This document shows, piece by piece, positions 1,805 through 34,472 of a stretch of DNA of 64,000 bases. Origin of the DNA: Perna viridis (lineage: Eukaryota); contig CM074519.1 in assembly GCA_037379345.1 (NCBI GenBank), positions 22,284,103-22,348,102 on the forward strand. The letters are read 5' to 3'. Each line of letters begins with the position of its first letter. Position 1 is the stretch's first letter. The position numbers were made by a program, and so were the translations under genes. Under the pieces are notes generated by a model. That model was not told the origin of the DNA, did not search any database, and saw only the letters and a list, made by a program, of their open reading frames with translations.

Positions 1805-2462
1805 CTGAAACAGTAAAATATTGTTATAATAAAAAAAGATACGGAGAAACAACATTAACACTAACACTTAGGTAACCGTCCACATAAAATGCAGACACTG
1901 CTAATAGAAAAATGATTCCTGTCTATATGTGCTATGTTTTTGCATACCGATAATCATATCTGTATTCAAATCTGTATTTTTGAGAAAACAATACACCAAG
2001 AACCATAACTTTTGCAAAATGTAAATTTTATGTACAATCGATATAATTTTTATCCAAAAGTACAAGAACCAAATGAAAAACTAAGACTAATTATGTGATC
2101 TGAAACTTGTTCTGAACAAGAAATTAAACAGAATTCAGTGTTTTTTTGACACGCAGAGATAAGTTCCTGTCTGATTTTTTTATAAAGACTACTACTTAAT
2201 TAGTTGGTATGATAATTGCAATACATGTATATATTGGATGAGAGTTATTTTTTCCTTGAAACTATAAAGAAAAAATAAATGATTTGTAATTCATAACTAA
2301 TAAGAAAGAATACATCGATAAATAAGTTGTTATGAAATAGCAGAAGCACGCCATTTATGCAGGTACAATGGAATAAGAAGACATTTTCTTAATAATGATA
2401 ACACAAATAAAGCTGATATTTATATTATTTAAGTAAAATATAATAGATTCATAACGAATTAA

Positions 2463-2632
2463 GAAGGTAGTCCTAAGGTAAGGAAAATAACTCTTGAAAT
2501 CAGTGATATGTCTGTATTATATTCAATTTCACCAAAGCCTATCGAGCTTTCATTTGAAACAGAAAGAATTCAGTCCATGTTGTTTGACGCTTACATGTGA
2601 TAGGGTTGTGTCCCATTTTCTAGGTCTACCCC
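2463..2632. mobile_element. Kolobok-like MITE copy (internally deleted)
   Basis: TTAA|GAAGGTAGTCC ... TAGGTCTACCCC, with an internal sequence shared with 40324-40534 and 48475-48671. Confidence 0.6.
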
Positions 2633-3289
2633 AACAATTAATATTTTATATTATACATCTTACTTAAATTTCTGATTTCCTTAGTTATAGCTAGTTGCTT
2701 TTCATTGCTATCTAGAACTACCAATATTTCATTCTGATTTTCACATGTCTTTTTAGCATGACTCTATGACAGTCTAATAGTGGACAACTGTATACATGTT
2801 CTCAGACCCATCATGTACAAGTAACAAGTAGACGGACAGGCTTAGATTGATAAATATATAAATGATGATGAAAAAGCATCTTTAAAATCTACAAGGATGC
2901 ACACTGCATACAATTTAGCTTTTTCACAGTATAAACAATCCAAATAGCTCATCAAGCAAGACTTATACTGATATAAATATCTCGTTCGAACCGAACTGCC
3001 AAACTCAGAAACTTAACTACTCTTGAACGTCGATGTATCTCTCTGCACCATGAGAACCTATATGTTCTTCGTTTCATAATTTTCCTTTACTCTTTCGTCT
3101 ATACCGGACTTGAATTTTCGTACGCAACTCGGTGGGTGTTTCTAGAAAAGCAGAGGATGTTTGTCATACCGGTCCATGCTCTTAGTTTTACGTACAGCCC
3201 CTGGAATGCGTTGTTTTGATTTCAATGGAATCCTGATTGGCTTCATTACTCTTTTAATTGTGTTCACACAATTTCTTTTTAAATTAAAG

Positions 3290-4780
3290 ATAAATACAGG
3301 TCAATTAAATAATTTATTCAAAATCAATATCAATACAAATAGAGAAATCATCTTTGAGTGATATTACACTGTCAGTTCGGTAGGTTTTTGTCATGCATGT
3401 TTCTAATTTTTCGATAATGCTTAAATCTCCCCTAACCGGAAGGACCATATTTGAATAAAGAGTTTTTGCAAGAATAGTTGTTATAGCCTTGATGTCCTCA
3501 ATCTCGAGGTTCTGCAATAACCATTTATAATTGAAAATTTTGGATGCAATAGGTAAAGTATAGTAATATGAAATGATCGGTATTGATTTGTCCCTGAAAT
3601 ATGGGGGACTTATGTTGCTTAAAGTTTTGTGATAGAGGATGTTAGTCAAATTAATTGCATCTATACCTTTGTTGACAACAAACGGTAGTGGAAGAAATGA
3701 TCACTTTTCTCTATCTTGATCTTCTACACAAACTGGTTTAAAGAGTTTGTGGAAACAAAAATGATGGCAACAAGTCTGTATAATGGCGAGGTAGATCCAG
3801 ATATAGGAGTGTCAAGACTTGTTTTGTAAAGGGAGTGTGGTAGAGTGAGATGTATAGAATAGAGTATAGTTTGAATGTTATGAAGTCCAAGAGGTTTTGT
3901 ATGAGAGGATGAAAACCATCTATGGAGACATCATGTATTTCGGTGACGTATAGTGGCGATAGCCATGACTCCTTTTCCGTCTTGGATTTTTGTCAAATAA
4001 ATTCCTCACATTTATGCTATTGTTTTATTGGCTTGAAAGCTTTCCTATACTTTTGATGTTGTCATTGCACCCGTAGAGTATTGCTGAACCTAGTCTACGT
4101 ATCCAGTATTTCTCATTTTCCCGACGATAGCCTTTACTTATGACGGGACAATTCGTTGGGTGGTAATTATTTTTGGAGAGTACGAACTTTCATAGAATGA
4201 TCTTGTTGATTAAAATTTTGATATACTGTCGGGAATATGTTGGTATTGATTCCGGAACTATAACAGCACATTCGTTTGTTTAATCGTTCTTGTGATTCAC
4301 TGACATATACTAGACCACATGAATCGCATATTAATCCATATATTAATATTGAATTTGTCGTTTTGCAACTTAAGTCATTGTTACTTCTTGAGTTATAGGT
4401 TTTGTTCGTAAGGGTACTAGTGAAGAAAGACTCAGTTATTAGAATGTTGCCTGCTTTTAATACCAAATTTTGATATAGCACGTTGTGGTTTGTCAACATT
4501 GTAGTCAAATATATCATTTAAAGTGATGGAAAATGGTTTGATTACGTTGAAAGAGTCTGAATTGTTGTACTGGAATAGATAGTCTGCAGACTGTGCGATT
4601 GGGTACGTTTTGTTGGAATTGTCGGAGCAACATCAATTCCAGATGTGAGTGTGCTAGGATTCCCATCTGGGGACATCATAGTCTAACAAGACAACAGTGT
4701 GTCCGTTGTATTGTCAGATTCGGACTTTTTTTGTACCGGGTGACGTCCGAGCCAGATTTGATTCATTCCTCTTGTTAAAA
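3290..4780 (-). mobile_element. Degenerate Penelope-like retroelement, 5' half with N-terminal GIY-YIG endonuclease (Naiad-type)
   Basis: ORF 4167-4517 contains LSCKTTNSILIYGLICDSCGLVYVSES (GIY-YIG with CxxC). Downstream are YGCNDNIKSIG, RRKRSHGYRHY and PPYFRDKSIPIISYYYTLPIASKIFNYK (ORF 3314-3649), so the endonuclease precedes the RT-proximal linker. Multiple frameshifts and stops. Confidence 0.8.
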
Positions 4781-6018
4781 CCATTAATTACAGTACTGGG
4801 CTGATGATACCTTCGGGAACAAAATCCACCAGCAGCGGCAGAATCAAGGAGACCAAGATTCTAGCACATATGGAAAGAAGGTAATCCAGGGACATAGACC
4901 TGACATAGAAAACAGACAATCACAACACAGAACATAAAATAACTAAATAATACATACAAAGTAACAAAAGTAAATGAGCAACTCGGACTGCACTAAAAAC
5001 TGGGAGCATGGACCAGGTGCTCCGATGGGGTAAACGTCCTCTGCTTTTCTAGAAACATCCGCAGAGTTGCTCATGAAAAGTCAATTCCGGGGTTGAGTGT
5101 TAGTTGTTGTGTTTTATTTTATGTATATTGTTTAGGTCTGCTCATTATTTCTGGATTGTGGATAAACTATTCTCTTTCTAGTTGTAACCATGGATACCTT
5201 GTTTTGCTTTAAAGGCATGATTCTCTCTTTTATCTTTGATCTCAGCTTAAGTGCTTGTTTTGTTATGTAAAATTAATATTTTAGTACATGTAGATTAAGT
5301 ATGCAGACTGTGCGATTGGGTACGTTTTGTTGGAATTGTCGGAGCAACATCAATTCCAGATGTGAGTGTGCTAGGATTCCCATCTGGGGACATCATAGTC
5401 TAACAAGACAACAGTGTGTCCGTTGTATTGTCAGATTCGGACTTTTTTTGTACCGGGTGACGTCCGAGCCAGATTTGATTCATTCCTCTTGTTAAAACCA
5501 TTAATTACAGTACTGGGCTGATGATACCTTCGGGAACAAAATCCACCAGCAGCGGCAGAATCAAGGAGACCAAGATTCTAGCACATATGGAAAGAAGGTA
5601 ATCCAGGGACATAGACCTGACATAGAAAACAGACAATCACAACACAGAACATAAAATAACTAAATAATACATACAAAGTAACAAAAGTAAATGAGCAACT
5701 CGGACTGCACTAAAAACTGGGAGCATGGACCAGGTGCTCCGATGGGGTAAACGTCCTCTGCTTTTCTAGAAACATCCGCAGAGTTGCTCATGAAAAGTCA
5801 ATTCCGGGGTTGAGTGTTAGTTGTTGTGTTTTATTGTATGTATATTGTTTAGGTCTGCTCATTATTTCTGGATTGTGGATAAACTATTCTCTTTCTAGTT
5901 GTAACCATGGATACCTTGTTTTGCTTTAAAGGCATGATTCTCTCTTTTATCTTTGATCTCAGCTTAAGTGCTTGTTTTGTTATGTAAAATTAATATTTTA
6001 GTACATGTAGATTAAGTA
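4585..6018. repeat. Near-identical 717-bp direct tandem duplication (4585-5301 / 5302-6018)
   Basis: Both units begin TGCAGACTGTGCGATTGGG and give identical ORF translations (4593.. and 5301..). I found only one mismatch by eye. Confidence 0.95.
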
Positions 6019-7046
6019 TGAAGTAAAGAATTGCAATACTAAATATACTCTTTATCGGTTTGAAGTTTTATTGATATTTTTCAAACCTTATCTTTTAACT
6101 GTGTAGGTAAGATAAACAAAAAGCTACATACAATGCAAAAGAAACCCTGAAATATCAAGGTAAAAAAAACGAATTACCGACGACGATGGCAAGTAAACCT
6201 GATTTCAACGAAAACACAATTAACATTAGTAGTAATTATATAGTGTTGAAAAATAAATATGTTCCATCAATCGATTATTCCTTGATATAATTTGCTATAA
6301 GCGTATGGGGTGAGGTAGAAGGACACAAATGTAAGGTTAGATGATATATTTTGTTACACATATCGATGAAAAAAGTCTTAAATGGGCTCAGTGATAATGC
6401 TTTGGCTTTTTATTCTTTAAGTCGTTGTTTAGATAATCACAGGAACGAAGATTAAAGGGGTAATCAAAATAACTCGTACAAATGAGCAACATTGACACCA
6501 CAAAAATAGGAAGCATGGACCAGGTTGAGTTGTCAGGAAAGAAACCATCTGTTTCCCATTTTCAATTCGATTATCATGCCAATATAAATTGTCAAAGTGA
6601 AAGGGTATTTTATTTTACTTTTGTATCGTATTAATTTTAAAATTAGAAGAAAAAAAAACTGTTAATGGACAAAATAACTCTGCTATTTCAATTTCAAAGT
6701 TTTTTTTTATTTTCCTTTTCGTTCAAATCCTGTATCTTTTTTTTATGATGTGACTGGTCCCATATTTGAATTCATTTCTAAGAACAAAAGCCCGTGTCAG
6801 TCACGATGTGTCCACTTATTAGTTAATGGTTTTGAACTTTTCCTTATATTTTACACGAAACCATTAAAGATGATTATAACATTCCTTGTTGTTTTACATT
6901 ACAAATACCACGTGTGAATAATTTGGAATTTAATAATGTTTCCTTAAAAAAACGAGTCAGTCAAGTTATGTCCGCTAGTTGTTATCAACTATTTACCCTG
7001 CAACATTTCCCTATAGTTTACATGAGACCATCAGTTAAAAGATCAG

Positions 7047-7053
7047 TATAAAA
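7047..7053 (+). promoter_or_regulatory. TATA box of WAP-pacifastin gene A
   Basis: TATAAAA about 105 nt upstream of the ATG at 7153. The homologous position in copy B reads TAGAAAG (27356-27362). Confidence 0.55.
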
Positions 7054-7152
7054 CTGTCCGTTGTTTAACAGTAAACTACTACGTACAAAAATATACGAGT
7101 TTAATTTTGAAACTTTTCATTACATAGAAGATTTTAGTTGTAAAGGAGCGTG

Positions 7153-10100
7153 ATGAATATGTTCTTTGCAATAGTTGCCGCCATACTTTTAGTTAGGGTA
7201 AGTAACTCAATACTGGTAATTTTGTTGTATAAAAAGCAAGTTCTCTCAAAAGTATCATGATTCAAAAGAAACAATAAAACTTTCAAGTTACAAAATATCG
7301 TTCAAAAAACGATATTTTCAAGGCGTTGCAAAACGTATTAAAATGATGCAACATGTTTCCATCAGTTAACGTGATTTTGCAGTTTATTTGTTTTGTAAAT
7401 ACACGAATGAACACAAAAGTTATTTTACATATTGCGAAATTTACCATGTTATCAAAGATTTTGCCGATTGATGATGAACATAGTGTGCATAATTATTAGT
7501 TGTAGCAATGCATTGTTGGATAAGGTATCCTATATAACAACTTACTAGAAAACTGTTCAATAATTATACAAATTTAAATCTTACCAACAAAAGAAATTTG
7601 TAGAGTATGTGGTATAATATCATATTTCCATATTTTAACATTATGACTTGCATATCTGATAGGTCGAGGCAACACCACCTAAAAAAGGCAATTGCCCTTC
7701 TATAAATTCAGGAACGAAATGTGACTGCCATCCTGGGCTTCCGCTATGTATAACGGATTACAATTGCAAAGGGAGTAAGTATGATTAAGGTTTTGTTTGA
7801 AAGATTGAAAGAGTAATCAAGGGAACCAAGTTTCTAGCGGTAATCAAAGAATGTAATCCAGGGGCAACGACACGACATGGAAAGCAGACATAAACAACAA
7901 AGATATAAAGTAAATAAGATAATACATACAAAGCGACAAAAGCAAATGAGCAACTTGGACTCAACTAAAAACTGGGAGCAAGGACCAGATGCACTTGTAG
8001 GATAAGGTCCTCTACTTTTCTAGAAACACTCGCCGAGGTGCTCGTAAAAAAATCAGGGGTAGACGAAATAGGATAGGAAAACTATGACCCGTTGAACAAA
8101 TCAGTTTTCATAGCGCCAATGGATACACCGTAACGATTCACAAGTTCATGATTGTGACCATAAAACTTCTGTAGTGATCACTTCAATCTTGTAGCAACAT
8201 AATTCTCTTCCAGATGCCTACTTGTTAGAAGTCTGGCGCGATACAAAAAGTCTGCGTAGTTTCGGCAAACTCTTGCATAACGTTTGAATTGTGATATGAA
8301 CACTCCATACTCAGGTTCTGAAGGGATGTTGCCACACATGAAAGGAAAGTGAACAATTTTGAATGAAAAGTAATTACGTTTGTCGTAAAGTTTGATCAAT
8401 AGTTTTCCATTATCATCGATTTCTATGTGTAGGTCAAGATATGAGGCTGACTTCCCAGTGTCTCTAGTATTCTTTATCTAAAATTCTTTGGGGTAGCTGC
8501 GATGTATCAAATTAGGATTTATTAAAGATAATACGTCATTTATATATCGGAAACTGAGATTTAAGGATCTAGCTAAACGATATGCTTTCTTTCGGATCAA
8601 AGAAGTCAGCCTCATAATAGTGAAAGTATTGGAATGTCGACATTTTGCCGACAAACGCGTCCACCATACTGGACAATTGTCGATAAAAAAATTCTAGCAT
8701 TTTGTAAACATCTTCTGTATATTTGAAAGATGATTTGGAATCTCTACCAAGAACAATATATTTGTATCTAGGTGTACCATTTTTTAAATAACAATGTATA
8801 ATGTTTTAGTGGGGATTTTGAGTGAGTATGGGAAATAGAATTATACAGTGTTGAGAAAATAACAGGTTATAATGCTATTATATTCTGATAATAGTTTTGA
8901 ACTGATGGTCTCCAGAAGCCCTTTCGAAATTTTCAGGATCTACATTGAATTAGTACCACTACGGGAGTAACACGTGTTGTGGTAGGACTGCAGACCTTCT
9001 TTGACAGCTGTAAATATTGAAGTTAAAGGTTTCAAAGAGGTTTGTTGGTACATTTTGCAGATCCAGCTATTAACGTTATTTGTATGGATATTTGTGGAGC
9101 TTTTGAGAGTATGGTAGCAATTGAGATATTATTACTTATATTATTTTCAACGTCTACCTCTGATAGTAAACATCGGATTTAAAATGTTTTGCAGACAAAA
9201 CAATGTAGTTTGGGCATCTGTCTGCTGGTACGACAACATATTTGTCATGTATTGTAGACAATGTTTTTGCTACATCGGAGTCTTTGAAAACTGATGTGGT
9301 ATTGGCAATAATTGACTTATTTAAAACTTTCTCACGTCCTTTACCCACTCTAACAGAGAACCAATGTCTTGTTCTCATTGTATCCATTTTCTTGCATATT
9401 CTTCCACGGCATCCATAAGAACTTTGAAGTTATAATTCCAATTTATGGAGCGCAGTTCACGGTACTTGGGACCTTTAGAAAAGATATTACTTGAACGAAT
9501 AATCAAGGGAACCAAGGTTATAGCGGTAATCAAAAGAATGTAATCCAGGGACAAAGACCAGACATGGAAAACAGACGAAAACATGAAATGACGTCATAGC
9601 CAAACAATATCGGAAAAACGTACTTCAGATGCCAGTCCTTGATATGATTGAATACAAATACTTTAGAAATTAAGTCGTCCTCATCGTAATTAATTTTTTT
9701 GAAATTCAGTAATTTCTTTTCTGAATAATATTTTATTTTTAGTTTGAGTTCTTGGGAAATACTTCATTGCTTTTCATTGTATTTACTTTTATTGTCTTTG
9801 AAAATTTGAACCCTATCTTATACTTGTAATAAGTTAAAATGGTTGTTTCATAACTCATCATTTCGCTTATTTATCAATTTAATACGAACGTGATATCCAA
9901 TGGAAGTATTTGTAGATATGAAGAGAAATTACAATCTATTGTATCTAGCAAAAAAGGTAGTCTGAATTTTGGAGAAAGTATATCATTGAAGTATGTATAT
10001 TGAATTGCTGACAAATGAGCGTAGTTTTATCATTTTGTTTGGATAAATAATTTGAATTATTTGAAAATCATTACTACTTATGCTGATTGTTTATAGTTTA

Positions 10101-11828
10101 GTTTTGCTTGTGCTTTCATATATTAGCTATCCCAATTATGTGCGATTCCGCTTTCTATGCTGCAAAAGTTGACTGTAAAATCGATAAAAATCAAATGCAA
10201 ATGTACAATATTTTTGTTTATATTTCACTGTTTTCTGTTATCAACATATTATGGTTATTTAAGCTGAGAAATGCTGTCCAATGCCATGCAACTGCATGAA
10301 AAGGTGTGTACCTCCCGGAGGTAAGTCCAAATTAAACATGAAATAAAACATACATATGGTAGATGCATGGTTATGTCTGATTTAGTCAACCCTAATAAGA
10401 TAAATAGCAAATCCTTNNNNNNNNNNNNNNNNNNNNNNNNNNNNNNNNNNNNNNNNNNNNNNNNNNNNNNNNNNNNNNNNNNNNNNNNNNNNNNNNNNNN
10501 NNNNNNNNNNNNNNNNNNNNNNNNNNNNNNNNNNNNNNNNNNNNNNNNNNNNNNNNNNNNNNNNNNNNNNNNNNNNNNNNNNNNNNNNGCATATAAAGAA
10601 TAGTATGTTGTTATAACCGACTGCTTGTTTCCAATGCAATACAGTAAGCGGATTGGCAAAATAATTGCAGTTTTTTGTCCTTGGAAAATGCTCATGAATA
10701 AATAACCTGCATAACTCAATGTCCGTTGGCAGGTAGTGTTCATTACACGATTCATCTTATTTGTAATTGATTCTTTCCAGTCAAAATTCGAAATATATAT
10801 GAATTGTTCATCTGGCAATAACAAATGCACCGATTCTCTGCAAAAGGATGACGGTTCATCTATACGGATCATGACATATCGACATATGACAATATATATA
10901 GTTGTTTTTTTTTAAATTCAACAAACACTCAGTCATTGCTGCTGATGGTGGATATAAGTTCTCCGAGGGTATTAACCATCCCAGTAGTGTAAGCAGAATT
11001 TCCATAAGATTTTACTCATCATATTAATCAAAATTTTAAATATTACATGTACAGATAAGTTTCAAAATAGTTAAAACACTGAGGCTTCATTTTAGGTATT
11101 GCACATGAGTACATGGTAGAACCTCTCGCTTTCTATTACAATAGTATTGGTTTTACGTCTCAGAATGTGACGACACTATTCGCTATACTGCTCCATCGGA
11201 TCATATTGATACAGGGAAAATATATAAACGTATAGAAAGGTCTGAAAACGATTCCCAACGATGTTAGAAATGTCAAATTTGTGATGCAAAGTTTTGGTCG
11301 TTCCCTCCGCGGGACTCGAACTTGTACGGCTGTGACATCTATAGCAACACCGCCTGCACAAAGTCCAGCGTCCTAGACCACTCGGCCAGCTAGGCTATAT
11401 AAAAATATAGCTCTTGCTGGCCAGGTAATTCCTCCTAGTAGGGTTTATCTAGGGCTGTAACTTGGTACTCGATGTATGGTAGTACGGGACAGTTCTGAGA
11501 AAGGTCTGAAAAATTCCCAATGATGTTAGAACAAAAATTTGGTTTTACGTCTCAGAATGTGACGACTCTATTCTCTACACTGCTCCATCGGATCAAATTG
11601 ATACAGGGAAGATAACGTAAACTTATAGAAGGGTCTGAAAAATTCCCAAGGATGTTAGAACTGTCAAATATAGCCTAGTTGGCCGAGTGGTCTGGGGCGC
11701 TGGACTTAGTGCAGGCGGTGTTGCCATAGATGTTACAGCAGTACGAGTTCGAGTCCCGCGGAGGGAACGACAAAAATTTGCTTCGCAAATTTGACAGTTC
11801 TAACATTGTTGGGAATTTTTCATACCCT

Positions 11829-11865
<37 letters not shown>

Positions 11866-24800: not shown

Positions 24801-26614
24801 TACTGATCAGATCCGACAACACAACACTTTTCAAGTATATAAACAAACAGGGAGGGACCAAATCTTCTCAGTTATGTTCTCAGGGAGAAGATGTACGCTT
24901 ATGCATATCCCCCAATTTGCCTGATACACAGAGCGTTAGAATATATGAGGCAGTTCAACTGTCAAATTCTTCTAATTGCTCCACTATGGCCACGGAGACA
25001 TTGGTACCCAGATCTACTGGAACTGTTGATAAAGTTTCCAGTCAGACTGCCAGTGATTCAGAATCTGTTGTGTTAACCTAAGACACAAATTTATCACCCA
25101 GATCTTGATATTTTTAGTCTGACTGCATGGCGTCTGTCGACAGATCCTATCAAACAGGGGGATTTTCAAAAGAAGCTAGGAAACTTCTCTCAGTCTCTTG
25201 GAGACGATGTACACAAAGGGACTATAGTTCCAGTTCAAAAAATATTATAGCTGTTGTGATAAAAGGGAAATCAATTCCAGTTCTCCAACTTTGAGCCATA
25301 TTACAGATTTTCCTGTATCACTATTTGATTAAGGTTTACAATATAGAACAATTGAGGGTTACAAGTCGATGCTTTCAAATGTTCTTCCTCATGTAGACAA
25401 TGTACGAGTAGGTCAGTATCATCTTATTGTTCGTCTCTTTAAAGGGGTCTTTCATTTCAGGCCTCCTAGCATGACATTATTGCCTGAGTGGGATTTACAG
25501 ACGGTTCTTGATATGTTACAAAAACAGTCTTTTGAACCTTTGAATGCTATTGATTTTCAATTTGTAATATTTAAAACTGGCGTTTTAGTGTCTGTAACTA
25601 CTTTTAGGAGATGTAGCGACTTGCAGTCTCTTAGAGTGAACGACACCCAAATGAGGATGCAAAAGAATGGTGTCCCATTTATAAGGTCAGAGTTATCAAA
25701 ACAAGACCATCATAATCACACGCGATCAAAAATGTTTTTTTTTAAATACAATGGGAAGTTAGATCCTAGGAAATGTTTATTTCAGTACCCAAAGGTGACT
25801 AAAAGTTTTAGAAGTACTTTGGAGAAAGATCAATAAGGTAAACCTTTTCTTTCAATTTGTGAACCACACAAATCAGTATCTGTGCAAACTGTTTCCTGGT
25901 GGATTTTCAGAGTAGAGTATCGGAAAATGTAAAGGCTCATTCAAATAGGGCAATTGAACCCTCATGGGCATTATATAAAGAAGCATTATTACATAACATA
26001 TTAGAAGCTGCAGATTGGTCTTCAGAATCCACTTTTGGGAAATTCTATTTAAGAGATTTCTCAGCTGATGTTTTGCATGTAGATAAGTTAATTATTTCGG
26101 CGAGTTGCCTACCAGTTTTGTTTTGGTGAAAGTATCTTAATAATTTATGGTGGAAGTATTCTATTCAAGTGTTTTTTGATGAAGAGTCAACGTGACACAG
26201 TTTATTTGAATGTTCTTTATTCAAATTGTGTTGCTGATATTTCAAGAAATGAGGGAGATATTGCTTTGGAATCATCCATATTGTATCAGTGACAAGTAAG
26301 TATTAATAATTTAAATAAAATTTCTAAATTTGTCATCAAGTTACAATTTTATGAAATATTAATACTTACTTGTCATCTTTCCCACTACCTACCCATGCTA
26401 TGAGTGATATTGGTTGGGTGTTTTGTTACCCGCCGATAAACTGAAGCATATGTGCACGCAGATGATCTAGGTCCTTAAGGTGTTAAATTTAGATCATCTG
26501 TGTGTTGGCGAATTATGGACTGACTCAAGGGGAATAATCCATTTGTATTAGTGAAGTGATGGGTAAGTATTAACATGTCATAAAATTGTAATGTGATTGC
26601 AAATTTTGAAATTT
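21812..26614 (+). mobile_element. DIRS1-type tyrosine-recombinase retrotransposon (degenerate ORFs, intact terminal architecture)
   Basis: Gag-like remnant about 22130-23500. RT 23971-24444 (WAVSLDLNGAYIHI, FKALCFG, YLDD). RNase H (HVNWLEMEAV, IRSDNTT). Methyltransferase-like YAYPP...IAPLWPRRHWYPDLL at 24891-25076. Tyrosine recombinase (RRCSDLQSL, AHSNR, AADWSSESTFGKFY) 25150-26130. Inverted terminal repeats about 21812-21980 and 26418-26560 plus a right extension, and an internal complementary region at about 26270-26377. Confidence 0.93.
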
Positions 26615-27464
26615 CTAACGAAAACAAAATCGACATTAGTAGAAATTATATAATTTTGAGAAATAAATATGTTCCATCAATTGGTCATTCCTTGCTTTAA
26701 TTTTCTTTGAGTGTATGGGGTGAGGTAGAACTGTTGTTATTGCCAGAAGAAGAACACAAATGTAAAGTTAGATGATAAATTTTGTTACACACATCGTTGA
26801 CAAAAGTCTTAAATGGACTCAGTGATAATTTCCTGGCTTTCTATTCTAAAGTCTTTGTTTAGAGTAATCAGAGGAACAAAAATTAGAGGGTAATCAAAGA
26901 ATATAAAATAACCAAAATAACTCATACAAATGAGCAACAATGACTTTTCTGACTTTAAAAATGAGAAAAACTGTTAACAGGACAAACTAACTCTGCTATT
27001 TTAAATTCAATGTTTATTTTTTGTTTTGCCTTGTCGTTCAAATCCTGTATCTTTTTATAACGTGACTGGTGCCTTATTTGAATTCATTTCTAAGAACAAT
27101 ATAGCGTATAAGTCACGATGTGTTCATTTCTTTTAGTAAATGGTTTTTGAACTTTTCCCTATATTTTACACGAAACTAGTTAAGACAATTATAAATTTCC
27201 TTGTTGTTTAATAGTACAAATATCACATAATAATTAGGAATTTAATCATGCTTGTTCTACCGTGTCAGTAAACTTGTGTCCGCTTGTTGTTATTAACAAT
27301 TTGTCCTGCAACGTTTCCCTATAATTTACATGAAACCATTAATTTAAAAGATGAGTAGAAAGGTGCTCGTTGTTGAAAAGTACACTACTACGTGTGAAAA
27401 TATACGAATTTAATTATTTGAAACTTTTCAAGAGTTAGAAAGATTTTAGCTGTAAAGGAGAGTG

Positions 27465-30400
27465 ATGAATACGTTCTTCGCAATTGTTGCCGCCATACTT
27501 TCAGTTAGGGTAAGTAACTCTATACTGACAATTTTGTTGTATAAAAGCAAATTCTCTCAAAAGTATCAGGATTCAAAAGAAACAATAAAACTCTCATGTT
27601 ACAAATATCGTCAAATAGGTGATTGATTCAAGGCGTTGCAAATGTATTAAAACAACATGGTGTAACTTATCTCCTGCAGTTAACCTGATGTTGAATGTTG
27701 TATTATATTATGTTTCGAGAACATTTTGATATAATCATTTTGTATATTCAATAGGTCGAAGTAACTCCAACGCCACCTAAAGAAGTTAATTGCCCTTCTA
27801 CACATTCAGATACGTATACGAAATGTGACTGTCATCCTTGGCCTCTGCAATGTAAAACGGATTATAATTGCAAAGGGAGTACGTCATCATTGTTTTTCCT
27901 TGAGATTCAGTTATATATATGAATAATACTTTATCTTTAAATATGAGTTCTTGGTAAAATACTTCATTGCTAGTCAATTTTCAAAGTTATATAAATTCTT
28001 GTCTTCTTTTTTGTACGAATTATCCACTTCAAAAGTTGAAACCAATCCTATAGATGCAATTAAATAATATGGTTGTTTCTCAACTTTTCAATTAGTTTCT
28101 TTAATAATTTCCATAAATGTGATTTCCAATGGAAATATTTGTAGTGCAGGTGAAAAAATATAATCTGATGTAAGTGACGTGTAAATGGGTAGTTTGTACT
28201 TTGGAGTTGATAGTAAATATCATTTGAAATATGGGTATTAAATGTGTGTGGTTTTATCAATTTTTTGTTGATAATAATTTGAATTATTTGAAAATTATTA
28301 CTACTAAAGCTGATTGTTTATAGGAAAATTCAGTTTTAATTGTGCTTTTATGCATTGGCTATTTGATCAAATGCGTATGAACAAACATTTTTTCTTATGA
28401 TTCACTGATTTCTTCTGTCTACATATAATTATCATCTAAGCTGAGAAATGCTGCGCAATGCCATGCGACTGCTTGAAAAGGTGTCTTCCTCCTGGAGGTA
28501 AGTCTAAATTAAACATTAAACAAAAATAAATATATATGGTAGATGCATGGTTATATTTGAATTAGTCAGCTCTTAGATTAAAAGAAACTCATTTGATGTA
28601 GGTTANNNNNNNNNNNNNNNNNNNNNNNNNNNNNNNNNNNNNNNNNNNNNNNNNNNNNNNNNNNNNNNNNNNNNNNNNNNNNNNNNNNNNNNNNNNNNNN
28701 NNNNNNNNNNNNNNNNNNNNNNNNNNNNNNNNNNNNNNNNNNNNNNNNNNNNNNNNNNNNNNNNNNNNNNNNNNNTTGACTACTTCTTGTATACAATTAC
28801 TGTTTGTATCAAGAACAATATATTTGATTATAATAATACTGATAAAAAAAAACCTGGAAACACGTTTACAACATATCAAAATTTGCAATATATATGACTG
28901 TATCTTTTTTTGCCTTTACTGATAAGTCAGCAACCGGTCATCTATCAGTTAAAAGAAATGATCAATTGAAAGAAAATTTTGAATACTTTGTAATGCACTC
29001 TGAAACAGTACATTTTTGTGTATTTTTCAGACTGTTACTTCAATGGTAAATCGTATCGCATAGGGGAAAGCGGTCCAGCTGCAGATGGATGCAATACGTG
29101 TTCGTGTAATCCTGACAAGACACTAACGTGTACTTATGTTGGATGTAGTGAGTTCTATTTTAGTTTAAGTGTTTTGTCACAAGTATACTAGAGTAAAGAT
29201 TCTAGCTCTTTTTTTACATTATTAATATGATGATCCAGTTTTGAGAAATTTTCTAGGGTAAATGGTAAGGAATCCAATAAGCTGTTGTACGTCTGAATTC
29301 ACCTCAGTCACATCACTTATATGTCGAAAATATTCTGAACCAATGCATGCAGATACAAATTTGACGCTTAAACCAATTAAGTAAATCTTGTCTCTGTGCG
29401 TGTAAATTTTAATTTTCGATAAAATCTGTTTTGTGTATTAAATGGATAACTATTTTGACGAACTAGTATATATTATTTTCCTCATTTCAATTATTATTCA
29501 TTTAAATTATACTAGTATATAGAGACACTACAGAAAAGTCTAAATGCTGGTAATGTCTGGACATAAGTTTTTGACTCTAATAAACACAAACTCGAGAGTG
29601 TCCTGGGGTTTTGTTCCTCTGGACCCCACGAAGGCATTGCCCTGAACACACTGGGGAAGGCTTCAACGGCCCCAGACGGATAAATACTTTTATGAAGTGC
29701 TGGCCTCTTAAGGAATAGGCAAATTTAGACAATGTGGGAACATACTCCATTGTCTATTGAAGAAGGCTTGACATGTCGTCTATCTCAGAAATGTCAAAGA
29801 ATTAATTACAAACGACTTCAAAGGTACAATATGAAGAAAAGGGAAAGTTACCTCCCGTTGATAACGACATTACACTGCATTTCGTAAAATGTATAATTTG
29901 AATTGCTGACACTTTAAAAAGAAATTAATGCAATTTCTGCATTAAAGACTTAAAATAACATTTTGAATGAGATTTTATGAAAAGGCTTGTGGGATTTCTC
30001 ACCATGATTCACCAAATGTCTGATTCCTACAGAGAATAAAACTTAAATACACAAATCGTAATAATGCATTGGATGGTGTCTTTTTTTTATTATTACAAAT
30101 ACATACATGCAAAACATATAATACATATATATGAGTTTAAATTCAAAACCTAAATTACGTATTTTACATTTATTAATACTGAATTTTAATAATACATTAG
30201 ATCGAACACGCATTTTGTTACTGAACATCTGCTTAGGACATTTTTTTTGTAATATGTAAAGATAGGAGAAAGCATGTATTTTTTCAAATGAGAAAATAAA
30301 TGCACAGGTCCCTATTCCTCAATAGATTTTAGCCAGTCCCTTGAAATGCGTTTACTTTTGTAGAAAACAAACTCTTGAAAAATTACGTAAAACATGCATA

Positions 30401-31474
30401 GTTTCAGCCCAAAACTTCAATGTGAAAGCTCTTTTCTGGTTTATGGTTTAAATTTTTTTTTTAAATGTACTTTTGTTGCATGGTTTCTTTCTTTTCTTTT
30501 TTTAGCTCACCTTGCCGGAGGCCATGCAATCTATTGCCATCACTGGGTTTCCGTCGTCGTCATCGTCGGTAATGATTTTTCAAAATTCTACTTCTCTGAG
30601 ACTATTTTACCACTTAAACTTGGTATGAATGTTTCTAGGAGTATCTTGCATAGAAATGATATGGGGATTTTTGATCCATCGGAAAACATAGCCGCTGCTA
30701 CTAAAATAGAACATAGGTTTAGACAGTAGTTTTCCGCATTTATCTCCAAAAGCGTAAGGTTAAGTTGATGTCCGACCTGTAAAAAGTGTTCAGCATGAGG
30801 AGTTCTATATGCAGTCAAATTTTCGCTTTAATCTCTTAAGCCATGTTGGAATTATTGCCCTTTTTCAACGTTTTTTGCTATTTGTAATGTTATTTCTCTC
30901 AAACATCTCCTCTGGCACTATTTTACCAATTGAAATTAAACTTTATATGTATGTCAGCATAGAAGTGATGTGGGGATTTCTGATCCGTCGAAAAACATGG
31001 CCAACATTACTGAAATAGAACATGGAGGTCGGACAGTAGGTTTTCGCATATATCTCCAAAACCGTTAGGTTTTGCTAAATTCTTTCAACAACTGAAATGA
31101 TCCTTATTATCAGGACTTCAAAAGTCTTCAGGAATAAAAGTTGTCAGACGACTCCTTATATGAGTTATCACCCTTGAAAGGGGGAAACATAACAGGTTTT
31201 TCAATCAATACCTTGAAAACTATGATAGATAGAAAGAAACTTTCAATTGCTGAAATAATCCTTATGATAAGTTCTACCAAAGTTTTCTTGAATGAAATTG
31301 TTGGACAACTTCTTGTTAAATTTATTGCCCTTGAAAGACAAAATTCAACCAGCTGAGCGATTCACGCTCCTGGGACCCTCTTGTTTGAGTTAGTAAATTC
31401 GATTCTGTATTTGCATGAGTGCAATAATTGGAATATTATATTATAGTAATAAACTGTAATCAATTTCAGATTAG
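27465..31474 (+). CDS. Secreted WAP-like + pacifastin/VWC-like cysteine-rich protein, copy B (115 aa)
   Basis: Exons 27465-27509, 27755-27878, 28441-28497, 29031-29147 and 31470-31474. Protein: MNTFFAIVAAILSVRVEV-TPTPPKEVNCPSTHSDTYTKCDCHPWPLQCKTDYNCKGTEKCCAMPCDCLKRCLPPG-DCYFNGKSYRIGESGPAADGCNTCSCNPDKTLTCTYVGCN*. AATAAA at 31528. All 16 Cys are conserved with copy A. Confidence 0.88.
30500..31385. mobile_element. Non-autonomous Helentron-type element (HINE) in intron 4 of gene B
   Basis: 5' TTTAGCTCACC...GGCCATG, a (CGT)n microsatellite and internal imperfect repeats (30580-30770 vs 30900-31080). 3' GCTGAGCGATTCACGCTCCTGGGACCCTCTTGTT. Confidence 0.7.
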
Positions 31475-31591
31475 AACAAGGAACAAAGGTATGATGAAGC
31501 AAACTTAACAAAAGAAGATAAAATATTAATAAAGTATAATTGGTTCAAGTATTAGTGTTTTTATACAAGTCATTTCTTTGTATCTCTTTCA

Positions 31592-32753
31592 AAGAGTAAT
31601 CAAGGGAACCAAAGTAATAGCGGTAATCAAAGAATGTAATCCAGGGACAAAGACCAGACTTGGAAAACAGACATTCAAAGAACATAAAGTAACTAAAATC
31701 ATACATACAAAGTAACAAAAGTAAATGAGCAACTCGGATTCCACTAAAAACTGGGAGCATGGACCAGGTGCATCGGTAGGGTAAGCGTCCTCTGCCTTTC
31801 TAGAAACACCCGCCGAGGTGCTCATGAAAAGTCAAGTCCGGGGTAGACAAACGAGGAAAGAAACTATGACCCGTTGAATACATCAGTTTTCATGGTGCTG
31901 ATGGATACACCATAACGATCCACGAGTTCATGATGACGACCACAAAACCTCTGTAGTGATGACTTCAATCTTGTAGCAACATAACCCTGTTCCAGAAGCC
32001 TATTTGTTAGAGTTCTAGCGCGATACAAAAAGTCTGCGTAGTTTCGGCAAGCTCTTGCATAACGTATGAGTTGTGATATGAACACTCCGTACGCAGGAGC
32101 CGAAGGGATGTTGCCACAGATGAAAGGAAAGTTAACAATTCTGAATGAAAAGTCATCACGTTTGTCGGAAAGTTTGGTCAATAGTTTTCCTTTACCATCG
32201 ATTTCTAAGTGTAGGTCAAGATATGAGGCTGACTTAACAGTGTCTGTAGTATCCTTTATCTCAAGTTCTTTTGGGTAGATAAGATGTATCAAATCCCCGA
32301 AATTAGAATTGTTTAAAGATAATACGTCATCTATATAGCGAAAACTGAGATTGAAGGATCTAGCCAAACGATATTCTTTCTTTCTGATCAGATCAGCTAT
32401 GAAGTCAGCCTCATAAGATTGAAGGAATAGCTCAGCAAGTAAAGGAGCACAATTTGTTCCCATTGGAATGCCGAACGTTTGTTGAAAAACACGTCCACCA
32501 CACTGGACAAATATGTTGTCGATTAAAAATTCCAGCATTTTGTAAACATCTTCCTCTGTATATTTGGAAGATGATTTGTAATTATTTCTTACAAAGTATG
32601 AGGAATCTCTACCAAGAACTATATCTTTGTATCTAGGTGTACCATCTTTTTTGGAAAAACAACGATGTATAATGTTTTTAAGTCGGGATTTTAACTGAGT
32701 ATGGGGAATAGAAGTATACAGTGTTGAAAAAGCATAGGTTTTAATGCTATTGG
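31592..32753 (-). mobile_element. 5'-truncated Penelope-like (Naiad-type) element: RT core/thumb + 3' tail
   Basis: Open frame from about 32753 to 31864: KTYAFSTLYTSIPH, FQQTFGIPMGTNCAPLLA, FRYIDD, ending KTDVFNGS* with no C-terminal endonuclease. It is inserted just after the poly(A) signal of gene B and is absent in copy A. Confidence 0.92.
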
Positions 32754-34472
32754 TTTTTATGCACCGTTATCATTAAATAACTGAGTTTAGATGTCGAAAT
32801 ATTTTATTGCGTTATATATTCAAGTATGTGTTCAAAATGTATAATTAATGAAAGTCCTAGAAAACATTTAACAAATCCATATTTGAAAACAGTATATACA
32901 AAATCAAGGATCATTAAAAGTTAAATTAAGGCATAATTGTAGAAAATATTTTTTTTCGACAAATTCAATCAATTTGTTTTAGGTGTTCCGATTTAATGCA
33001 TTGTCCTTCTTCGAAGACGTTCTTTAAAACATTCTTGTTTTTGTGGCTGATATTTGTTTGTAACTTGCTCTAAGTACGTTTGTCTTTTCTCTAAAAAAAT
33101 GTTGGCCGATCATCCTGCCCATTGAATAATATGAAAAACACCTACCATCACATTATAACTAGACCGGCAAACGCTGTACTGTACGAAAACTTTAAATTGC
33201 CGAGATACATTGACCTGATTATATAACAATACATAACAATACATAAGAATGCTTCAATTCAAATAAAAATTCGATAGTACCCAAATCTTAGGAGCTCAAA
33301 TTGAAATTTATTCTGATTAGTATTTATATTTTAACCTATACATTTGGATTTCCTCTGACACTAGACAAAATTTATCTTTAAAGGTCGAAATTCAATGCTG
33401 ATAAATTACTAAATTAGAAACTTTAAAAGTGACATTTTTTACTGTTCAAACCGACACATTGCTTTTGTGCCAATAAGTATTTCATTTGCGCTAAAACATC
33501 TTCGATTTGTCCCACAAACCATTTTTCATTTGGGATTAAAATAAATTATTAAATTTGAGCAAATAGCAGGTAAATTTGAGGTAGCATATTCAAACGGCAC
33601 TTGGGGCACCGATGGTTTCGACCAAATTGTCCGTCCGATTCTTTAATTTCATTAAAAGTCGTATTTTGTAAGTTTCGGGGCCTACAATTCTAAATATAAC
33701 AAATAAATGCCTAATACCACTATCAAACAAAACATCGATTTTTTCCTTAAAGCACTATACATGATTGTAAGTAGTAACAAGCAATTGCTTTACATGTCCG
33801 TTCTACCCCAAGGACTTAATATTAATATTCAGAGTACTAATCGTTAAAACTATTTACTTGAAACTTTATTTATCTTTTTTACCTAACAATTAATTGGAAA
33901 TAGCGCCCAAGAAAGAATTAGTACTTGTTGCAAATGAAATAGTGAATATTGTTAACATTGGGGCAAAAGATGAAGCTGTTTAAACATTAATTAAATGGGA
34001 TTCAATTGTAGTTATCAAATAGTTTTGTTTAATTATGTTTTGGCCCCTTTTTGTATCTAACTACGCACACTGCTTAGCGTTGGTCAAGTACTAAAGTTGA
34101 AAAAAGGTATTTTTTTGCTCTTGACATACTTATAATCATGTTCCCATCATAAATTGTTTCCGCATTTGTCTATTTTTCTTTTGGTCCACGATTGTTCTCG
34201 ATTCAATACGACGTTACGATAAGAGTTGTCGTTAATATCGTTTACGGAAGATAACGTTGTTTTGTTGCTCTGCATTGAATGTGTTTGAAGGAGGTTGAAA
34301 ATAATACTTTTATCACAAAGAAAGATCGAGCAATAATAAAGAAAGAAATGTGATTGAAATAAATTATACTCTCTCAAAAGACTTGAGTCCTACAAATGTT
34401 TAATTGTTTATTTGTTGAAAAAGGTCCGTATTTTTAAAATTTTTTATCAAACTGTAACAAACGATGCCTTTG

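What the first reader, a model, noticed from the sequence alone, without database searches (positions are those of the whole stretch)
7153..31474. Hidden tandem pair of secreted WAP + pacifastin-like two-domain proteins
Seen: two intact 5-exon genes invisible to the ORF track, each encoding signal peptide + WAP-like domain + C-x18-CN-x-C-x-C-x7-CT-x3-C domain ending one residue before the stop. Established: CNxCxC...CTxxxC is the pacifastin (MEROPS I19) signature, best studied in arthropods as a regulator of protease cascades. WAP domains (I17) are protease inhibitors or antimicrobials and also occur in mollusc shell proteins. Inference: a compact double-headed inhibitor/defence protein. I do not recognise this architecture as a named family, and it is the strongest candidate for an undescribed system here. 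The C-terminal domain could instead be a truncated VWC-like module.
Basis: partly seen in the sequence, partly recalled or inferred. Interest (0 to 1): 0.8.

Follow-up and report, generated by a model that had tools for sequence, protein, structure and literature searches.

The report
Tandem secreted WAP plus pacifastin-like genes
Two neighbouring small genes in what is probably a bivalve genome each encode a secreted protein with a WAP domain joined to a six-cysteine module that is intermediate between insect pacifastin protease inhibitors and the first half of a von Willebrand C domain; the genes look real, but this module class and its pairing with WAP in molluscs was described in silico in 2026.

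Summary
Gene A (7153-15199) and gene B (27465-31474) are tandem paralogues on the + strand. Each has five GT-AG exons with the same phases. They encode 111 and 115 aa: a signal peptide, a 10-cysteine WAP domain split over exons 2 and 3, and a 38-aa six-cysteine module (exon 4). A 5-base last exon adds Asn and the stop. All three N gaps lie in introns.

The C-terminal module sits between families. Pfam gives Pacifastin_I 24/19 bits and VWC 22.5/18 bits, all below threshold. A confident AlphaFold model (pLDDT 92) fits VWF/mucin E modules, VWC subdomain 1 and fibronectin type I over all 38 residues. It fits solved pacifastins over about 31 residues. The 18-residue C1-C2 loop matches the "ancestral" long-loop pacifastin-like class published in 2026, which is common in Mollusca and co-occurs with WAP.

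The genome holds at least 138 such modules. They include WAP genes with 4 to 13 or more modules and a roughly 40-repeat array.

RNA support is thin. One low-depth spliced contig joins exons 3 and 4 of gene B, and three deep RNA runs show nothing.

The most likely function is a small two-headed protease inhibitor or defence protein. This is inferred, not shown. I class it as a new member of a known kind, of moderate-low interest. This scan had not noted the family elsewhere in this genome.

The parts
7153..7197 (+). Gene A exon 1: ATG plus a 15-codon signal-peptide exon (hydrophobic core FFAIVAAILLV), phase 0 donor AGG|GTAAGT
   Evidence: Conserved with gene B exon 1. A TATA-like AAAATATACGA lies about 60 nt upstream in both copies (by eye).
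7663..7774 (+). Gene A exon 2: end of the signal peptide, a Pro-rich linker and the N-terminal half of the WAP domain (5 Cys). Ends in phase 1.
   Evidence: Pfam WAP 15.6 bits on profile positions 1-25/41. A profile of this exon and its paralogues retrieves only WAP proteins.
10264..10320 (+). Gene A exon 3: C-terminal half of the WAP domain (KCC...C.C...C, 5 Cys), phase 1 to 1
   Evidence: The joined WAP aligns across the exon 2/3 junction with the Ostrea edulis eppin-like WAP: 44% identity over 52 aa with all 10 Cys aligned (sandbox only).
10417..10588 (.). Assembly gap inside gene A intron 3, 96 nt after the exon 3 donor
   Evidence: Not coding in the model.
12029..12145 (+). Gene A exon 4: six-cysteine long-loop pacifastin-like / VWC-SD1-like module, phase 1 to 1. 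The putative P1-P1' is Leu-Met in CTLMGC.
14958..15096 (.). Assembly gap inside gene A intron 4, 98 nt before the exon 5 acceptor
15195..15199 (+). Gene A exon 5, coding part: AT completes the Asn codon and TAG is the stop. The 3' UTR continues to an AATAAA at 15247-15252.
   Evidence: The acceptor and the ATTAG are conserved with gene B. No RNA evidence for this junction.
27465..27509 (+). Gene B exon 1: signal-peptide exon
27755..27878 (+). Gene B exon 2: linker and WAP N-terminal half (4 codons longer than in A)
28441..28497 (+). Gene B exon 3: WAP C-terminal half
   Evidence: Covered by the spliced contig of run X8 (table 8, record 1).
28606..28775 (.). Assembly gap inside gene B intron 3
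   Evidence: The X8 contig skips it, joining exon 3 to exon 4.
29031..29147 (+). Gene B exon 4: six-cysteine module. The putative P1-P1' is Tyr-Val in CTYVGC.
31470..31474 (+). Gene B exon 5, coding part (AT + TAG). AATAAA at 31528-31533.
22131..26129 (+). Degraded retroelement (reverse transcriptase plus RNase H ORFs, frames broken) lying between the two genes. Not part of them.

Best explanation
Shown: two tandem, recently diverged paralogous genes. Each encodes a secreted precursor of about 111-115 aa. A signal peptide of about 17-18 residues is followed by a short Pro-rich linker. Next comes a WAP domain with the canonical eight cysteines plus one extra CxC pair on each side. Directly abutting it is one 38-residue six-cysteine module that ends one residue before the C-terminus.

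The module belongs to the long-loop ("ancestral-type") pacifastin-like class. Structurally this is the same unit as VWC subdomain 1 and the VWF/mucin E module: a pacifastin core plus an N-terminal beta-hairpin.

The genes are the one-module members of a family in this genome built from phase 1-1 module exons. Other members are WAP + 1, WAP + 4 to 13 or more, and module-only arrays of about 40.

Inferred: the mature protein of about 92-97 aa is a compact two-headed canonical (substrate-like) serine-protease inhibitor or antimicrobial of extracellular fluids. In the module, the C5-T-P1-P1'-x-C6 loop at the free C-terminus would act as the binding loop, as in locust PMP-C/SGCI (CTLKAC). P1 would be Leu in A and Tyr in B, which predicts chymotrypsin-, elastase- or subtilisin-like targets. 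Paralogues with Asp, Glu or Leu at P1 would extend the range. The WAP domain would be the second head or a cationic antimicrobial part.
For: - Gene models and conservation.
- Same exon plan in further paralogues (L007, L008).
- All 16 Cys kept, dN/dS 0.54.
- Spliced exon 3-exon 4 contig in run X8.
- WAP identity. Pfam N-half hit. The exon-2 profile finds only WAP proteins among 1.84 billion. 44% identity, with all 10 Cys aligned, to the Ostrea edulis eppin-like WAP, which itself passes Pfam's threshold and is paired with a Kunitz inhibitor domain.
- Module identity. Pacifastin_I 24.0/19.0 bits and VWC 22.5/18.0 bits. The module profile hits solved pacifastin inhibitors at E 3e-4 to 2e-3 and FCGBP/MUC5AC/VWF E modules. 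The AlphaFold model has pLDDT 91.9. Foldseek lists pacifastins at TMq 0.53-0.64, rmsd 1.6-2.5 A, 31-41% identity. VIA gives pacifastin Z 3.1-3.5.
- The C1-C2 loop of 18 residues, rich in G/Y/F, fits the published long-loop class found in 109 mollusc proteins and linked to WAP (PMC13388995).
- The chain ends right after C6, as in free pacifastin peptides and unlike VWC or E modules.
- The C5-C6 loop and C4-C5 loop are the most variable parts among WAP-linked paralogues, while Thr after C5 is invariant in these six. dN/dS is 0.98 in the module's C-terminal half against 0.27-0.6 elsewhere.
Against: - No biochemical activity is known for any long-loop module. The 2026 paper is wholly computational.
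- Both genes miss Pfam's Pacifastin_I threshold, and both lack the Gly of the C4-C5 loop that the family description calls conserved.
- Over its full length the model fits E modules, VWC and FnI better (TMq 0.69-0.78; Z 3.8-5.0) than it fits pacifastins. Those folds are binding modules, not inhibitors.
- The same module forms huge arrays and scaffolds in this genome. "VWC/pacifastin" and WAP proteins occur in mollusc shell matrices (PMC4094399, PMC5854119).
- The extra cysteine right after WAP C2 sits where elafin/SLPI have their binding loop (my knowledge), so WAP inhibition is uncertain.
- Expression: zero reads on exons 1-4 of gene B in three deep RNA runs. The only spliced contig has depth 2.3 and retains 32 nt of intron 2.
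- The excess divergence near the putative reactive site is not significant (Fisher p = 0.06).
Confidence: 0.5

Rival explanations
1. The protein is a binding or matrix protein, not an inhibitor. The six-cysteine module would work as VWC subdomain 1, E modules and FnI modules do, as a small beta-sheet protein-protein or protein-mineral binding unit. Candidate partners are the shell or byssal matrix, the mucus network, or a BMP-type ligand. The WAP domain would act as in lustrin A or perlwapin, modulating crystal growth or protecting the matrix. A and B would be the shortest members of a scaffold family.
For: - Full-length structural matches are best to E modules, VWC and FnI.
- 48 of 60 genome modules match Pfam VWC at E <= 1e-3.
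- The same genome holds WAP + 4 to 13 or more module genes and 15- to 40-module arrays.
- The Lottia shell proteome lists a 'VWC/pacifastin' protein and an 'antistasin, WAP' protein.
- WAP and VWC-repeat proteins occur in bivalve shell proteomes.
- The 2026 paper itself proposes matrix-tethered roles for long-loop domains.
Against: - A and B are tiny and carry a single module that ends at a free C-terminus. They lack the second VWC subdomain (CCxxC).
- Their closest WAP relative is paired with a Kunitz inhibitor.
- CN after C2 and CT after C5 are pacifastin-type signatures.
- Hydrophobic P1-type residues and loop hypervariability among paralogues are typical of inhibitor families.
Confidence: 0.3
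2. The genes are young duplicates that are silent or decaying. The intact frames would simply reflect recent duplication, and the protein has no current role.
For: - No reads on gene B exons in three deep RNA runs, and only one contig of depth 2.3, partly unspliced.
- No predicted protein of this architecture in 5.8 and 1.84 billion-protein collections.
- Neighbouring relics: a module with a premature TAG at C9:22375089 and a WAP exon with stops at C9:44623503.
- dN/dS is fairly high at 0.54, and near 1 in the module's C-terminal half.
Against: - At dS about 0.27, both copies keep every splice site, the frame, the tiny last exon, the poly(A) signal and 16 of 16 cysteines. By my arithmetic the chance of that is near 1e-4.
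- One correctly spliced junction is observed.
- More distant paralogues (L007, L008) keep the same plan.
- Tissue- or stage-restricted inhibitor genes are commonly absent from bulk RNA runs.
Confidence: 0.12

Closest known systems
Long-loop ('ancestral') pacifastin-like domains of Lophotrochozoa (Rodriguez-Aguilar et al., Sci Rep 2026, PMC13388995)
   Same: Six-Cys scaffold, Asn after C2 and a C1-C2 loop of 13-20 residues (here 18) forming a G/Y/F-rich beta-hairpin. Abundant in Mollusca, often in multidomain proteins, with WAP, VWC, TIL, Kunitz and Kazal listed as partners.
   Different: A and B lack the Gly of the C4-C5 loop. Their putative P1 is hydrophobic (Leu, Tyr), whereas the paper finds Lys, Glu and Thr dominant in molluscs. 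The exact minimal WAP + one-module protein is not described there, and nothing in that class has been assayed.
Conventional pacifastin inhibitors (MEROPS I19; locust PMP-C/SGCI/SGTI, crayfish pacifastin light chain; PDB 1GL1, 1KGM, 2F91, 2VU8)
   Same: CNxCxC core, CT-x3-C binding-loop frame (A has CTLMGC; PMP-C has CTLKAC). About 31 residues superpose at rmsd 1.6-2.5 A with 31-43% identity. The chain ends just after C6.
   Different: The C1-C2 loop is 18 residues rather than 9-12, with an extra N-terminal hairpin. The loop Gly is missing. The Pfam score is below threshold. The module is fused to a WAP domain rather than released from a multi-PLD precursor. It is molluscan rather than arthropod.
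VWC domain subdomain 1 / VWF-mucin E module (Pfam VWC PF00093, TILa PF12714; PDB 5NIR, 5NB8, 2MHP, 8OES, 8RDE)
   Same: Whole-module fit (35-38 residues, rmsd 1.1-1.9 A, TMq 0.69-0.78). Shares the C-x-Y-x-G-x-x-Y-x-x-G-x-x-F and CxxCxC motifs.
   Different: No second subdomain (no CCxxC) and no VWD-C8-TIL context. It carries the pacifastin-type Asn after C2 and Thr after C5.
Eppin-type two-headed inhibitors (WAP + Kunitz), e.g. Ostrea edulis eppin-like XP_056003343.1
   Same: A small secreted protein with a signal peptide, then one WAP domain with the same 10-Cys variant (44% identity), then one small disulfide-rich inhibitor-type domain.
   Different: The second domain here is the pacifastin-like module rather than Kunitz.
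Lustrin A / perlwapin and 'VWC/pacifastin' shell-matrix proteins of molluscs
   Same: Secreted mollusc proteins combining WAP with cysteine-rich repeats. The multi-module relatives in this genome resemble such scaffolds.
   Different: A and B are minimal two-domain proteins, and there is no evidence that they occur in shell. For lustrin A the comparison rests on the literature only (and my knowledge).

Membership tests
WAP four-disulfide core (Pfam PF00095, MEROPS I17) | Eight cysteines spaced C1..C2..C3-x5-C4-x5-C5C6-x3-5-C7-x3-4-C8 | tested here: met
   Both proteins have C-x8/10-C-x-C-x6-C-x5-C-x5-CC-x3-C-x-C-x3-C. That is the canonical eight plus one extra Cys after C2 and one after C7. 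The same 10-Cys variant occurs in paralogues and in the Ostrea edulis eppin-like protein.
WAP four-disulfide core (Pfam PF00095, MEROPS I17) | Score at or above Pfam's gathering threshold (20.8 bits) | tested here: inconclusive
   The domain is split by an intron. Exon 2 of A alone gives 15.6 bits on positions 1-25/41. B exon 2 and the 20-aa exon 3 pieces give nothing. The joined domain was not sent to Pfam, because that step was left out by rule. Indirect support: it is 44% identical to a WAP that scores 26.1 bits, and the exon-2 profile retrieved five full-length proteins that all carry Pfam WAP, plus one 55-aa fragment without a family hit.
Pacifastin, conventional (Pfam PF05375, MEROPS I19) | C1-x(9-12)-C2 spacing | tested here: not met
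   The spacing is 18 in both genes.
Pacifastin, conventional (Pfam PF05375, MEROPS I19) | C2-N-x-C3-x-C4 and C5-T-x3-C6 motifs | tested here: met
   CNKCSC / CNTCSC and CTLMGC / CTYVGC. Asn occurs in 50 of 60 and Thr in 35 of 60 genome modules.
Pacifastin, conventional (Pfam PF05375, MEROPS I19) | Conserved Gly in the C4-C5 loop | tested here: not met
   Absent in A (TPAKMVV) and B (NPDKTLT). Present in 42 of 60 other modules of the genome.
Pacifastin, conventional (Pfam PF05375, MEROPS I19) | Score at or above Pfam's gathering threshold (27.9 bits) | tested here: not met
   24.0 bits for A and 19.0 bits for B, aligned only from C2 to C6. Some relatives do pass: P0001 scores 31.3 bits, and the best genome module reaches E 1.2e-9.
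Pacifastin, conventional (Pfam PF05375, MEROPS I19) | Three-stranded sheet fold with disulfides C1-C4, C2-C6, C3-C5 | tested here: inconclusive
   The model (pLDDT 91.9) has three strands and superposes on 2VU8, 1GL0, 2F91 and 7SND over 30-34 residues at rmsd 1.6-2.5 A, TMq 0.53-0.64, Z 3.1-3.5. The E-values are not significant for so small a domain. The disulfide pairing could not be read because the tool returns no coordinates.
Pacifastin, conventional (Pfam PF05375, MEROPS I19) | Tight-binding inhibition of serine proteases through the P1-P1' bond between C5 and C6 | not testable with these tools
   Needs recombinant protein and enzyme assays.
Long-loop ('ancestral') pacifastin-like domain (PMC13388995) | Six-Cys core with a C1-C2 loop of 13-20 residues forming a G/Y/F-rich N-terminal beta-hairpin, and TM >= 0.5 to pacifastin | tested here: met
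   The loop is 18 residues with the motif Y-F-N-G-x-S-Y-x-I-G. The model shows paired residues 2-3 and 6-7. TMq to solved pacifastins is 0.53-0.64. The class's conserved loop Gly is missing.
VWC domain (Pfam PF00093) | Ten cysteines including both C2xxC3xC4 and C8C9xxC10 motifs (two subdomains) | tested here: not met
   Only the first motif and six Cys are present, and the protein ends one residue after the sixth Cys. The Pfam alignment covers positions 1-36 of 57 at 22.5/18.0 bits, below the 27.6 threshold.
E module / TILa (Pfam PF12714) of VWD assemblies | Six-Cys module following TIL within a VWD-C8-TIL-E assembly | tested here: not met
   Fold and profile similarity are good: FCGBP E 2e-8 summed, VWF TIL'E' E 0.006, TMq 0.69-0.78. 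But there is no VWD, C8 or TIL context. The module follows a WAP domain.

The most novel reading that the evidence does not exclude
The one-module WAP-linked genes would be an independent molluscan 'liberation' of a soluble inhibitor from a matrix-type module. This would parallel what is proposed for arthropod pacifastins. A VWC-SD1/E-type cassette exon (phase 1-1) would have been captured behind a WAP domain, given a free C-terminus by a 5-base terminal exon, and its C5-C6 loop then diversified to hydrophobic P1 residues (Leu, Tyr). The result would be a lineage-specific family of two-headed inhibitors. It would also be a living intermediate showing how pacifastin inhibitors derive from VWC-like binding modules.
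Probability: 0.15. Interest if true: 0.55.

Novelty: new member of a known kind. Interest (0 to 1): 0.32.

Why it matters
If the proteins are active inhibitors, they would be the first functional evidence that long-loop pacifastin-like modules outside arthropods inhibit proteases. So far this is only predicted. They would also add a compact WAP+PLD two-headed design to the bivalve immune or matrix-protection repertoire. The family in this genome runs from one module to about 40 modules, with one module per phase 1-1 exon. That makes it a clean system for studying how small disulfide-rich cassettes move between scaffold and soluble-effector roles. It also shows that Pfam's Pacifastin_I, VWC and TILa models overlap on one module class. 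As it stands, this is an annotation gain of modest surprise.

Tried and rejected
- Word-index protein searches. Open frames containing the module (L003 frame, 42-134 aa window; L007 frame, 81-257 aa window) found only P0001, a 132-aa module protein with a lipobox-like leader, or nothing. Searching with the Ostrea eppin-like WAP found only WAP+Kunitz and multi-WAP proteins. No WAP+module protein turned up. The queries were short exon pieces, so absence is weak evidence.
It gave 6 hits, none with a PLD. The module itself was not searched in that library.
- The ESM Atlas look-up failed twice because the machine was busy.
- The RNA test could only be laid on gene B (6-kb limit, one call). Gene A and junctions 1-2, 2-3 and 4-5 remain untested.
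- Reading through the exon 4 donor was rejected. The resulting tails (11 and 14 residues) are not conserved between A and B, whereas the donor, the distant acceptor and ATTAG are conserved.
- A plain full VWC domain was rejected because there is no second subdomain.
- A conventional pacifastin was rejected because of the loop length, the missing Gly and the sub-threshold score.
- Positive selection at the putative reactive site was not established (omega 0.98 on 14 changes; Fisher p 0.06).
- Notes of this scan searched by words gave nothing on this family.
- Left out by rule: the joined (spliced) proteins were not sent to Pfam, database, structure or cluster tools. They were built only inside sandbox scripts for translation, dN/dS and one local blastp. 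The letters under the N gaps were not read from the second copy.

Full report
OBSERVATION

The window is AT-rich eukaryotic DNA, about 32% GC. A self-comparison shows that 6007-12159 plus 15162-15739 is a diverged tandem copy (70-82% identity) of 26611-29160 plus 31442-33190.

Reading the conserved blocks gives two co-oriented genes with five exons each.
- Gene A: 7153-7197, 7663-7774, 10264-10320, 12029-12145, 15195-15199.
- Gene B: 27465-27509, 27755-27878, 28441-28497, 29031-29147, 31470-31474.

All eight introns are GT-AG with good donors, and the phases (0, 1, 1, 1) are the same in both genes. The last coding exon contributes only AT plus TAG. It is preceded by the same tttcag acceptor in both copies and followed by AATAAA about 50 nt downstream. 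The products are 111 and 115 aa.

The three N gaps lie in A intron 3, A intron 4 and B intron 3, so no reading frame crosses a gap. The exons of each gene do sit on different sides of scaffold joins. Three things support continuity. Both copies have the same order. An RNA-type contig joins B exon 3 to exon 4 across the gap. A second, gap-free copy of the block is colinear; I used its coordinates only and did not read its letters.

GENE REALITY

A and B differ at dS about 0.27 and dN about 0.15, giving omega 0.54. They nevertheless keep the frame, every splice site and all 16 cysteines. By my arithmetic, at about 20% neutral divergence only about 0.55 of Cys codons would survive, so 16 of 16 has a chance near 1e-4.

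More distant paralogues (L007 at C9:23.01 Mb, L008 at C9:26.22 Mb) have the same three-exon core with the same split of the WAP domain and the same phase 1-1 module exon.

RNA evidence is thin. Three raw RNA-seq runs of one study, each sampled at 19-25%, put no reads on exons 1-4 of gene B. One 160-nt contig (depth 2.3) from a run guessed to be RNA joins 28409-28495 to 29029-29101. Given the 2-nt AG ambiguity, that is the predicted exon 3-exon 4 junction. The contig still carries 32 nt of intron 2. The heavy coverage at 30.4-31.7 kb belongs to repeats. Junctions 1-2, 2-3 and 4-5, and all of gene A, are untested.

N-TERMINAL DOMAIN

Exon 2 of A hits Pfam WAP at 15.6 bits on profile positions 1-25 of 41. 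This is below threshold because the intron splits the domain.

A profile of exon 2 from nine paralogues (A1) was searched against 1.84 billion proteins and returned six hits at E <= 1e-3. Five are full-length WAP proteins by Pfam, and the sixth is a 55-aa fragment with no family hit. The informative hit is Ostrea edulis "eppin-like" XP_056003343.1, which is WAP plus Kunitz. Others come from Saccostrea echinata and Magallana gigas. These suggest the host is a bivalve.

In a sandbox blastp, the spliced WAP of A aligns without a break across the exon 2/3 junction to the O. edulis WAP. Identity is 44% over 52 aa with all ten cysteines aligned. The domain is therefore a WAP with the canonical eight cysteines plus an extra pair, one after C2 and one after C7. 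This variant is shared with oysters.

C-TERMINAL MODULE

On its own, the 38-aa exon 4 peptide scores below threshold for both Pacifastin_I (24.0 and 19.0 bits, aligned from C2 to C6 only) and VWC (22.5 and 18.0 bits, profile positions 1-36 of 57).

The genome (723 Mb; the window is C9:22,284,103-22,348,102) holds at least 138 matches to this module. They include:
- genes with the same WAP followed by at least 4, at least 8 and at least 13 module exons (L018, L020, L019);
- single-exon arrays of 15 to about 40 modules (L014, L013).

As whole proteins, these arrays score 571 bits on Pacifastin_I or 181 bits on VWC. Of 60 non-identical modules, at E <= 1e-3, 48 match VWC, 40 match Pacifastin_I and 13 match TILa.

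A profile of the 60 modules (A2) was run against PDB sequences.
- FCGBP E modules match over the whole length (summed E 2e-8).
- Locust and other pacifastin inhibitors (2VU8, 1WO9, 1GL1/1PMC, 1GL0, 2XTT) match at E 3e-4 to 2e-3 over positions 11/16-38.
- MUC5AC, VWF TIL'E' (E 0.006), NEL and FnI follow.

AlphaFold2 on A's module with this alignment gives pLDDT 91.9 and a small three-stranded sheet plus an N-terminal hairpin.
- Foldseek lists mucin, VWF and FCGBP E modules and collagen IIA / CCN3 VWC at TMq 0.69-0.78 over 34-38 columns (rmsd 1.0-1.8 A). It lists pacifastins at TMq 0.53-0.64 over 31-34 columns (rmsd 1.6-2.5 A, 31-41% identity).
- VIA-align gives Z 4.7-5.0 for FnI and E modules, 3.6-3.9 for VWC and 3.1-3.5 for pacifastins. 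An unbiased scan of 48,161 chains finds nothing else above these values.

For a 38-residue domain these scores are individually weak. The hit list is coherent, though.

Conclusion on the module: it is a pacifastin core (CNxCxC ... CT-x3-C) with an extra N-terminal beta-hairpin, and that is structurally the VWC subdomain 1 / E-module / FnI unit.

LITERATURE

In 2009 no pacifastin was found in Mollusca, although Trichoplax had a 42-domain precursor (PMC2689174).

A 2026 structural-phylogenomic study (PMC13388995) defines exactly this class. It describes "ancestral" pacifastin-like domains with a 13-20-residue, Gly/Tyr/Phe-rich N-terminal hairpin, against 9-12 residues in arthropods. It reports 109 proteins in Mollusca. 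About a third of the long-loop proteins are multidomain, and the listed partners include VWC, lustrin, laminin G, TIL, WAP, Kazal and Kunitz. That work is entirely computational.

A and B fit this class (loop of 18, Asn after C2). They lack its conserved C4-C5 Gly. Their putative P1 residues are hydrophobic (Leu-Met, Tyr-Val) rather than the Lys, Glu and Thr said to dominate in molluscs.

Shell proteomes list "VWC/pacifastin" and WAP proteins (PMC4094399; PMC5854119).

MECHANISM

Shown: a secreted architecture of signal peptide, 10-Cys WAP and one long-loop pacifastin-like module with a free C-terminus. These genes are the minimal members of a cassette-exon family.

Inferred (about 50%): a two-headed canonical serine-protease inhibitor or antimicrobial. 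Four observations support this.
- The C5-T-P1-P1'-x-C6 frame is the binding loop of locust inhibitors, and A has CTLMGC where PMP-C has CTLKAC.
- The chain stops right after C6, as in free pacifastin peptides.
- Among six WAP-linked paralogues, Thr after C5 is invariant while the next three positions vary (L, Y, D, E, E, L at P1).
- The nearest WAP relative is fused to a Kunitz inhibitor.

Omega is 0.98 in the C-terminal half of the module against 0.27-0.6 elsewhere. This agrees with the scan's other note on this exon (s1-758131), but it is not significant (p = 0.06).

Main rival (about 30%): a matrix- or ligand-binding protein. The arguments are the better full-length fit to binding modules, the giant arrays and the shell-matrix literature.

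Minor rival (about 12%): silent young duplicates.

NOVELTY AND SCORE

The genes appear unannotated in the collections I could reach. The exact minimal WAP + one-module protein is not named anywhere I could find. The module class, its abundance in molluscs and its co-occurrence with WAP are published, however, and WAP plus a second inhibitor domain is a familiar design. I rate it a new member of a known kind, interest about 0.3.

Noticed in passing
G000:C9:22504000-22529097 (L021, L002, L006) against window 2528-13592 and 27529-30642: A second copy of the whole A-B block lies about 216 kb downstream at 99.5-99.7% identity, introns included. Exons 2-4 are 100% identical at the protein level. This is either a very recent segmental duplication or an uncollapsed haplotype in the assembly. 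The copy has no Ns at the places of the window's gaps; I did not read those letters.
   Followed up: partly
L013 = G000:C9:23170500-23177500, ORF 1083-5885 (+): A single open frame of 1600 aa made of about 40 head-to-tail 39-aa copies of the same six-cysteine module (period 117 nt). Pfam Pacifastin_I gives 571 bits in 40 stretches. It recalls the 42-domain Trichoplax TAPP-1. The opposite strand is also open for 1574 aa, probably a by-product of the repeat.
   Followed up: partly
L018, L019, L020 (G000:C9:23080500-23089500, 23110500-23120400, 23130000-23138000): Three genes with the same two-exon 10-Cys WAP followed by at least 4, at least 13 and at least 8 module exons, one module per exon. 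This shows that the finding's genes are the one-module end of a WAP + n-module family. Full gene models were not built.
   Followed up: partly
L014 (C9:23188500-23192500), L015/L012/L011 (C11:6.24-6.25 Mb), L016 (C9:32323500-32326500): Further module arrays of 599, 463 and 394 aa open frames. Some score best as VWC and others as Pacifastin_I. One L016 module has the literal locust-type stretch GKTFKDKCNTC with a 16-residue C1-C2 loop.
   Followed up: partly
window 22131-26129 (+): A degraded retroelement between the two genes. Its ORFs hit RVT_1 (42 bits) and RT_RNaseH (21 bits), and the frames are broken into several pieces.
   Followed up: partly
window 31563-31700 and 7805-8879, 9491-9583, 20810-21347, 31588-32751: A dispersed repeat family present in A intron 2 and downstream of gene B. 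It is heavily represented in the RNA runs (depth 170-270 per strand class), with many loose ends, so the reads come from many copies.
   Followed up: no
G000:C9:22375089-22375184 (L004/L024), C9:44623503-44624547 (L017), C9:22699989-22701233 (L003/L022): Relics and partial members of the same small family. One is a module exon cut by a TAG with no WAP exons within 8 kb. One is a WAP first-half exon with a second-half exon carrying two TAA. One has intact WAP second-half and module exons, but its first-half exon was not found within 6 kb.
   Followed up: partly
P0001 (Logan contig, 132 aa): A protein with a lipobox-like leader (LSGC) and one long-loop module that passes Pfam Pacifastin_I (31.3 bits). 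It is possibly one of the bacterial pacifastin-like proteins discussed in the 2026 paper. Its origin is not known.
   Followed up: no
window 11800-11870: A (TG)n microsatellite in gene A intron 3, read as CVCVCV in ORF lists. It is absent at the matching place in gene B.
   Followed up: no
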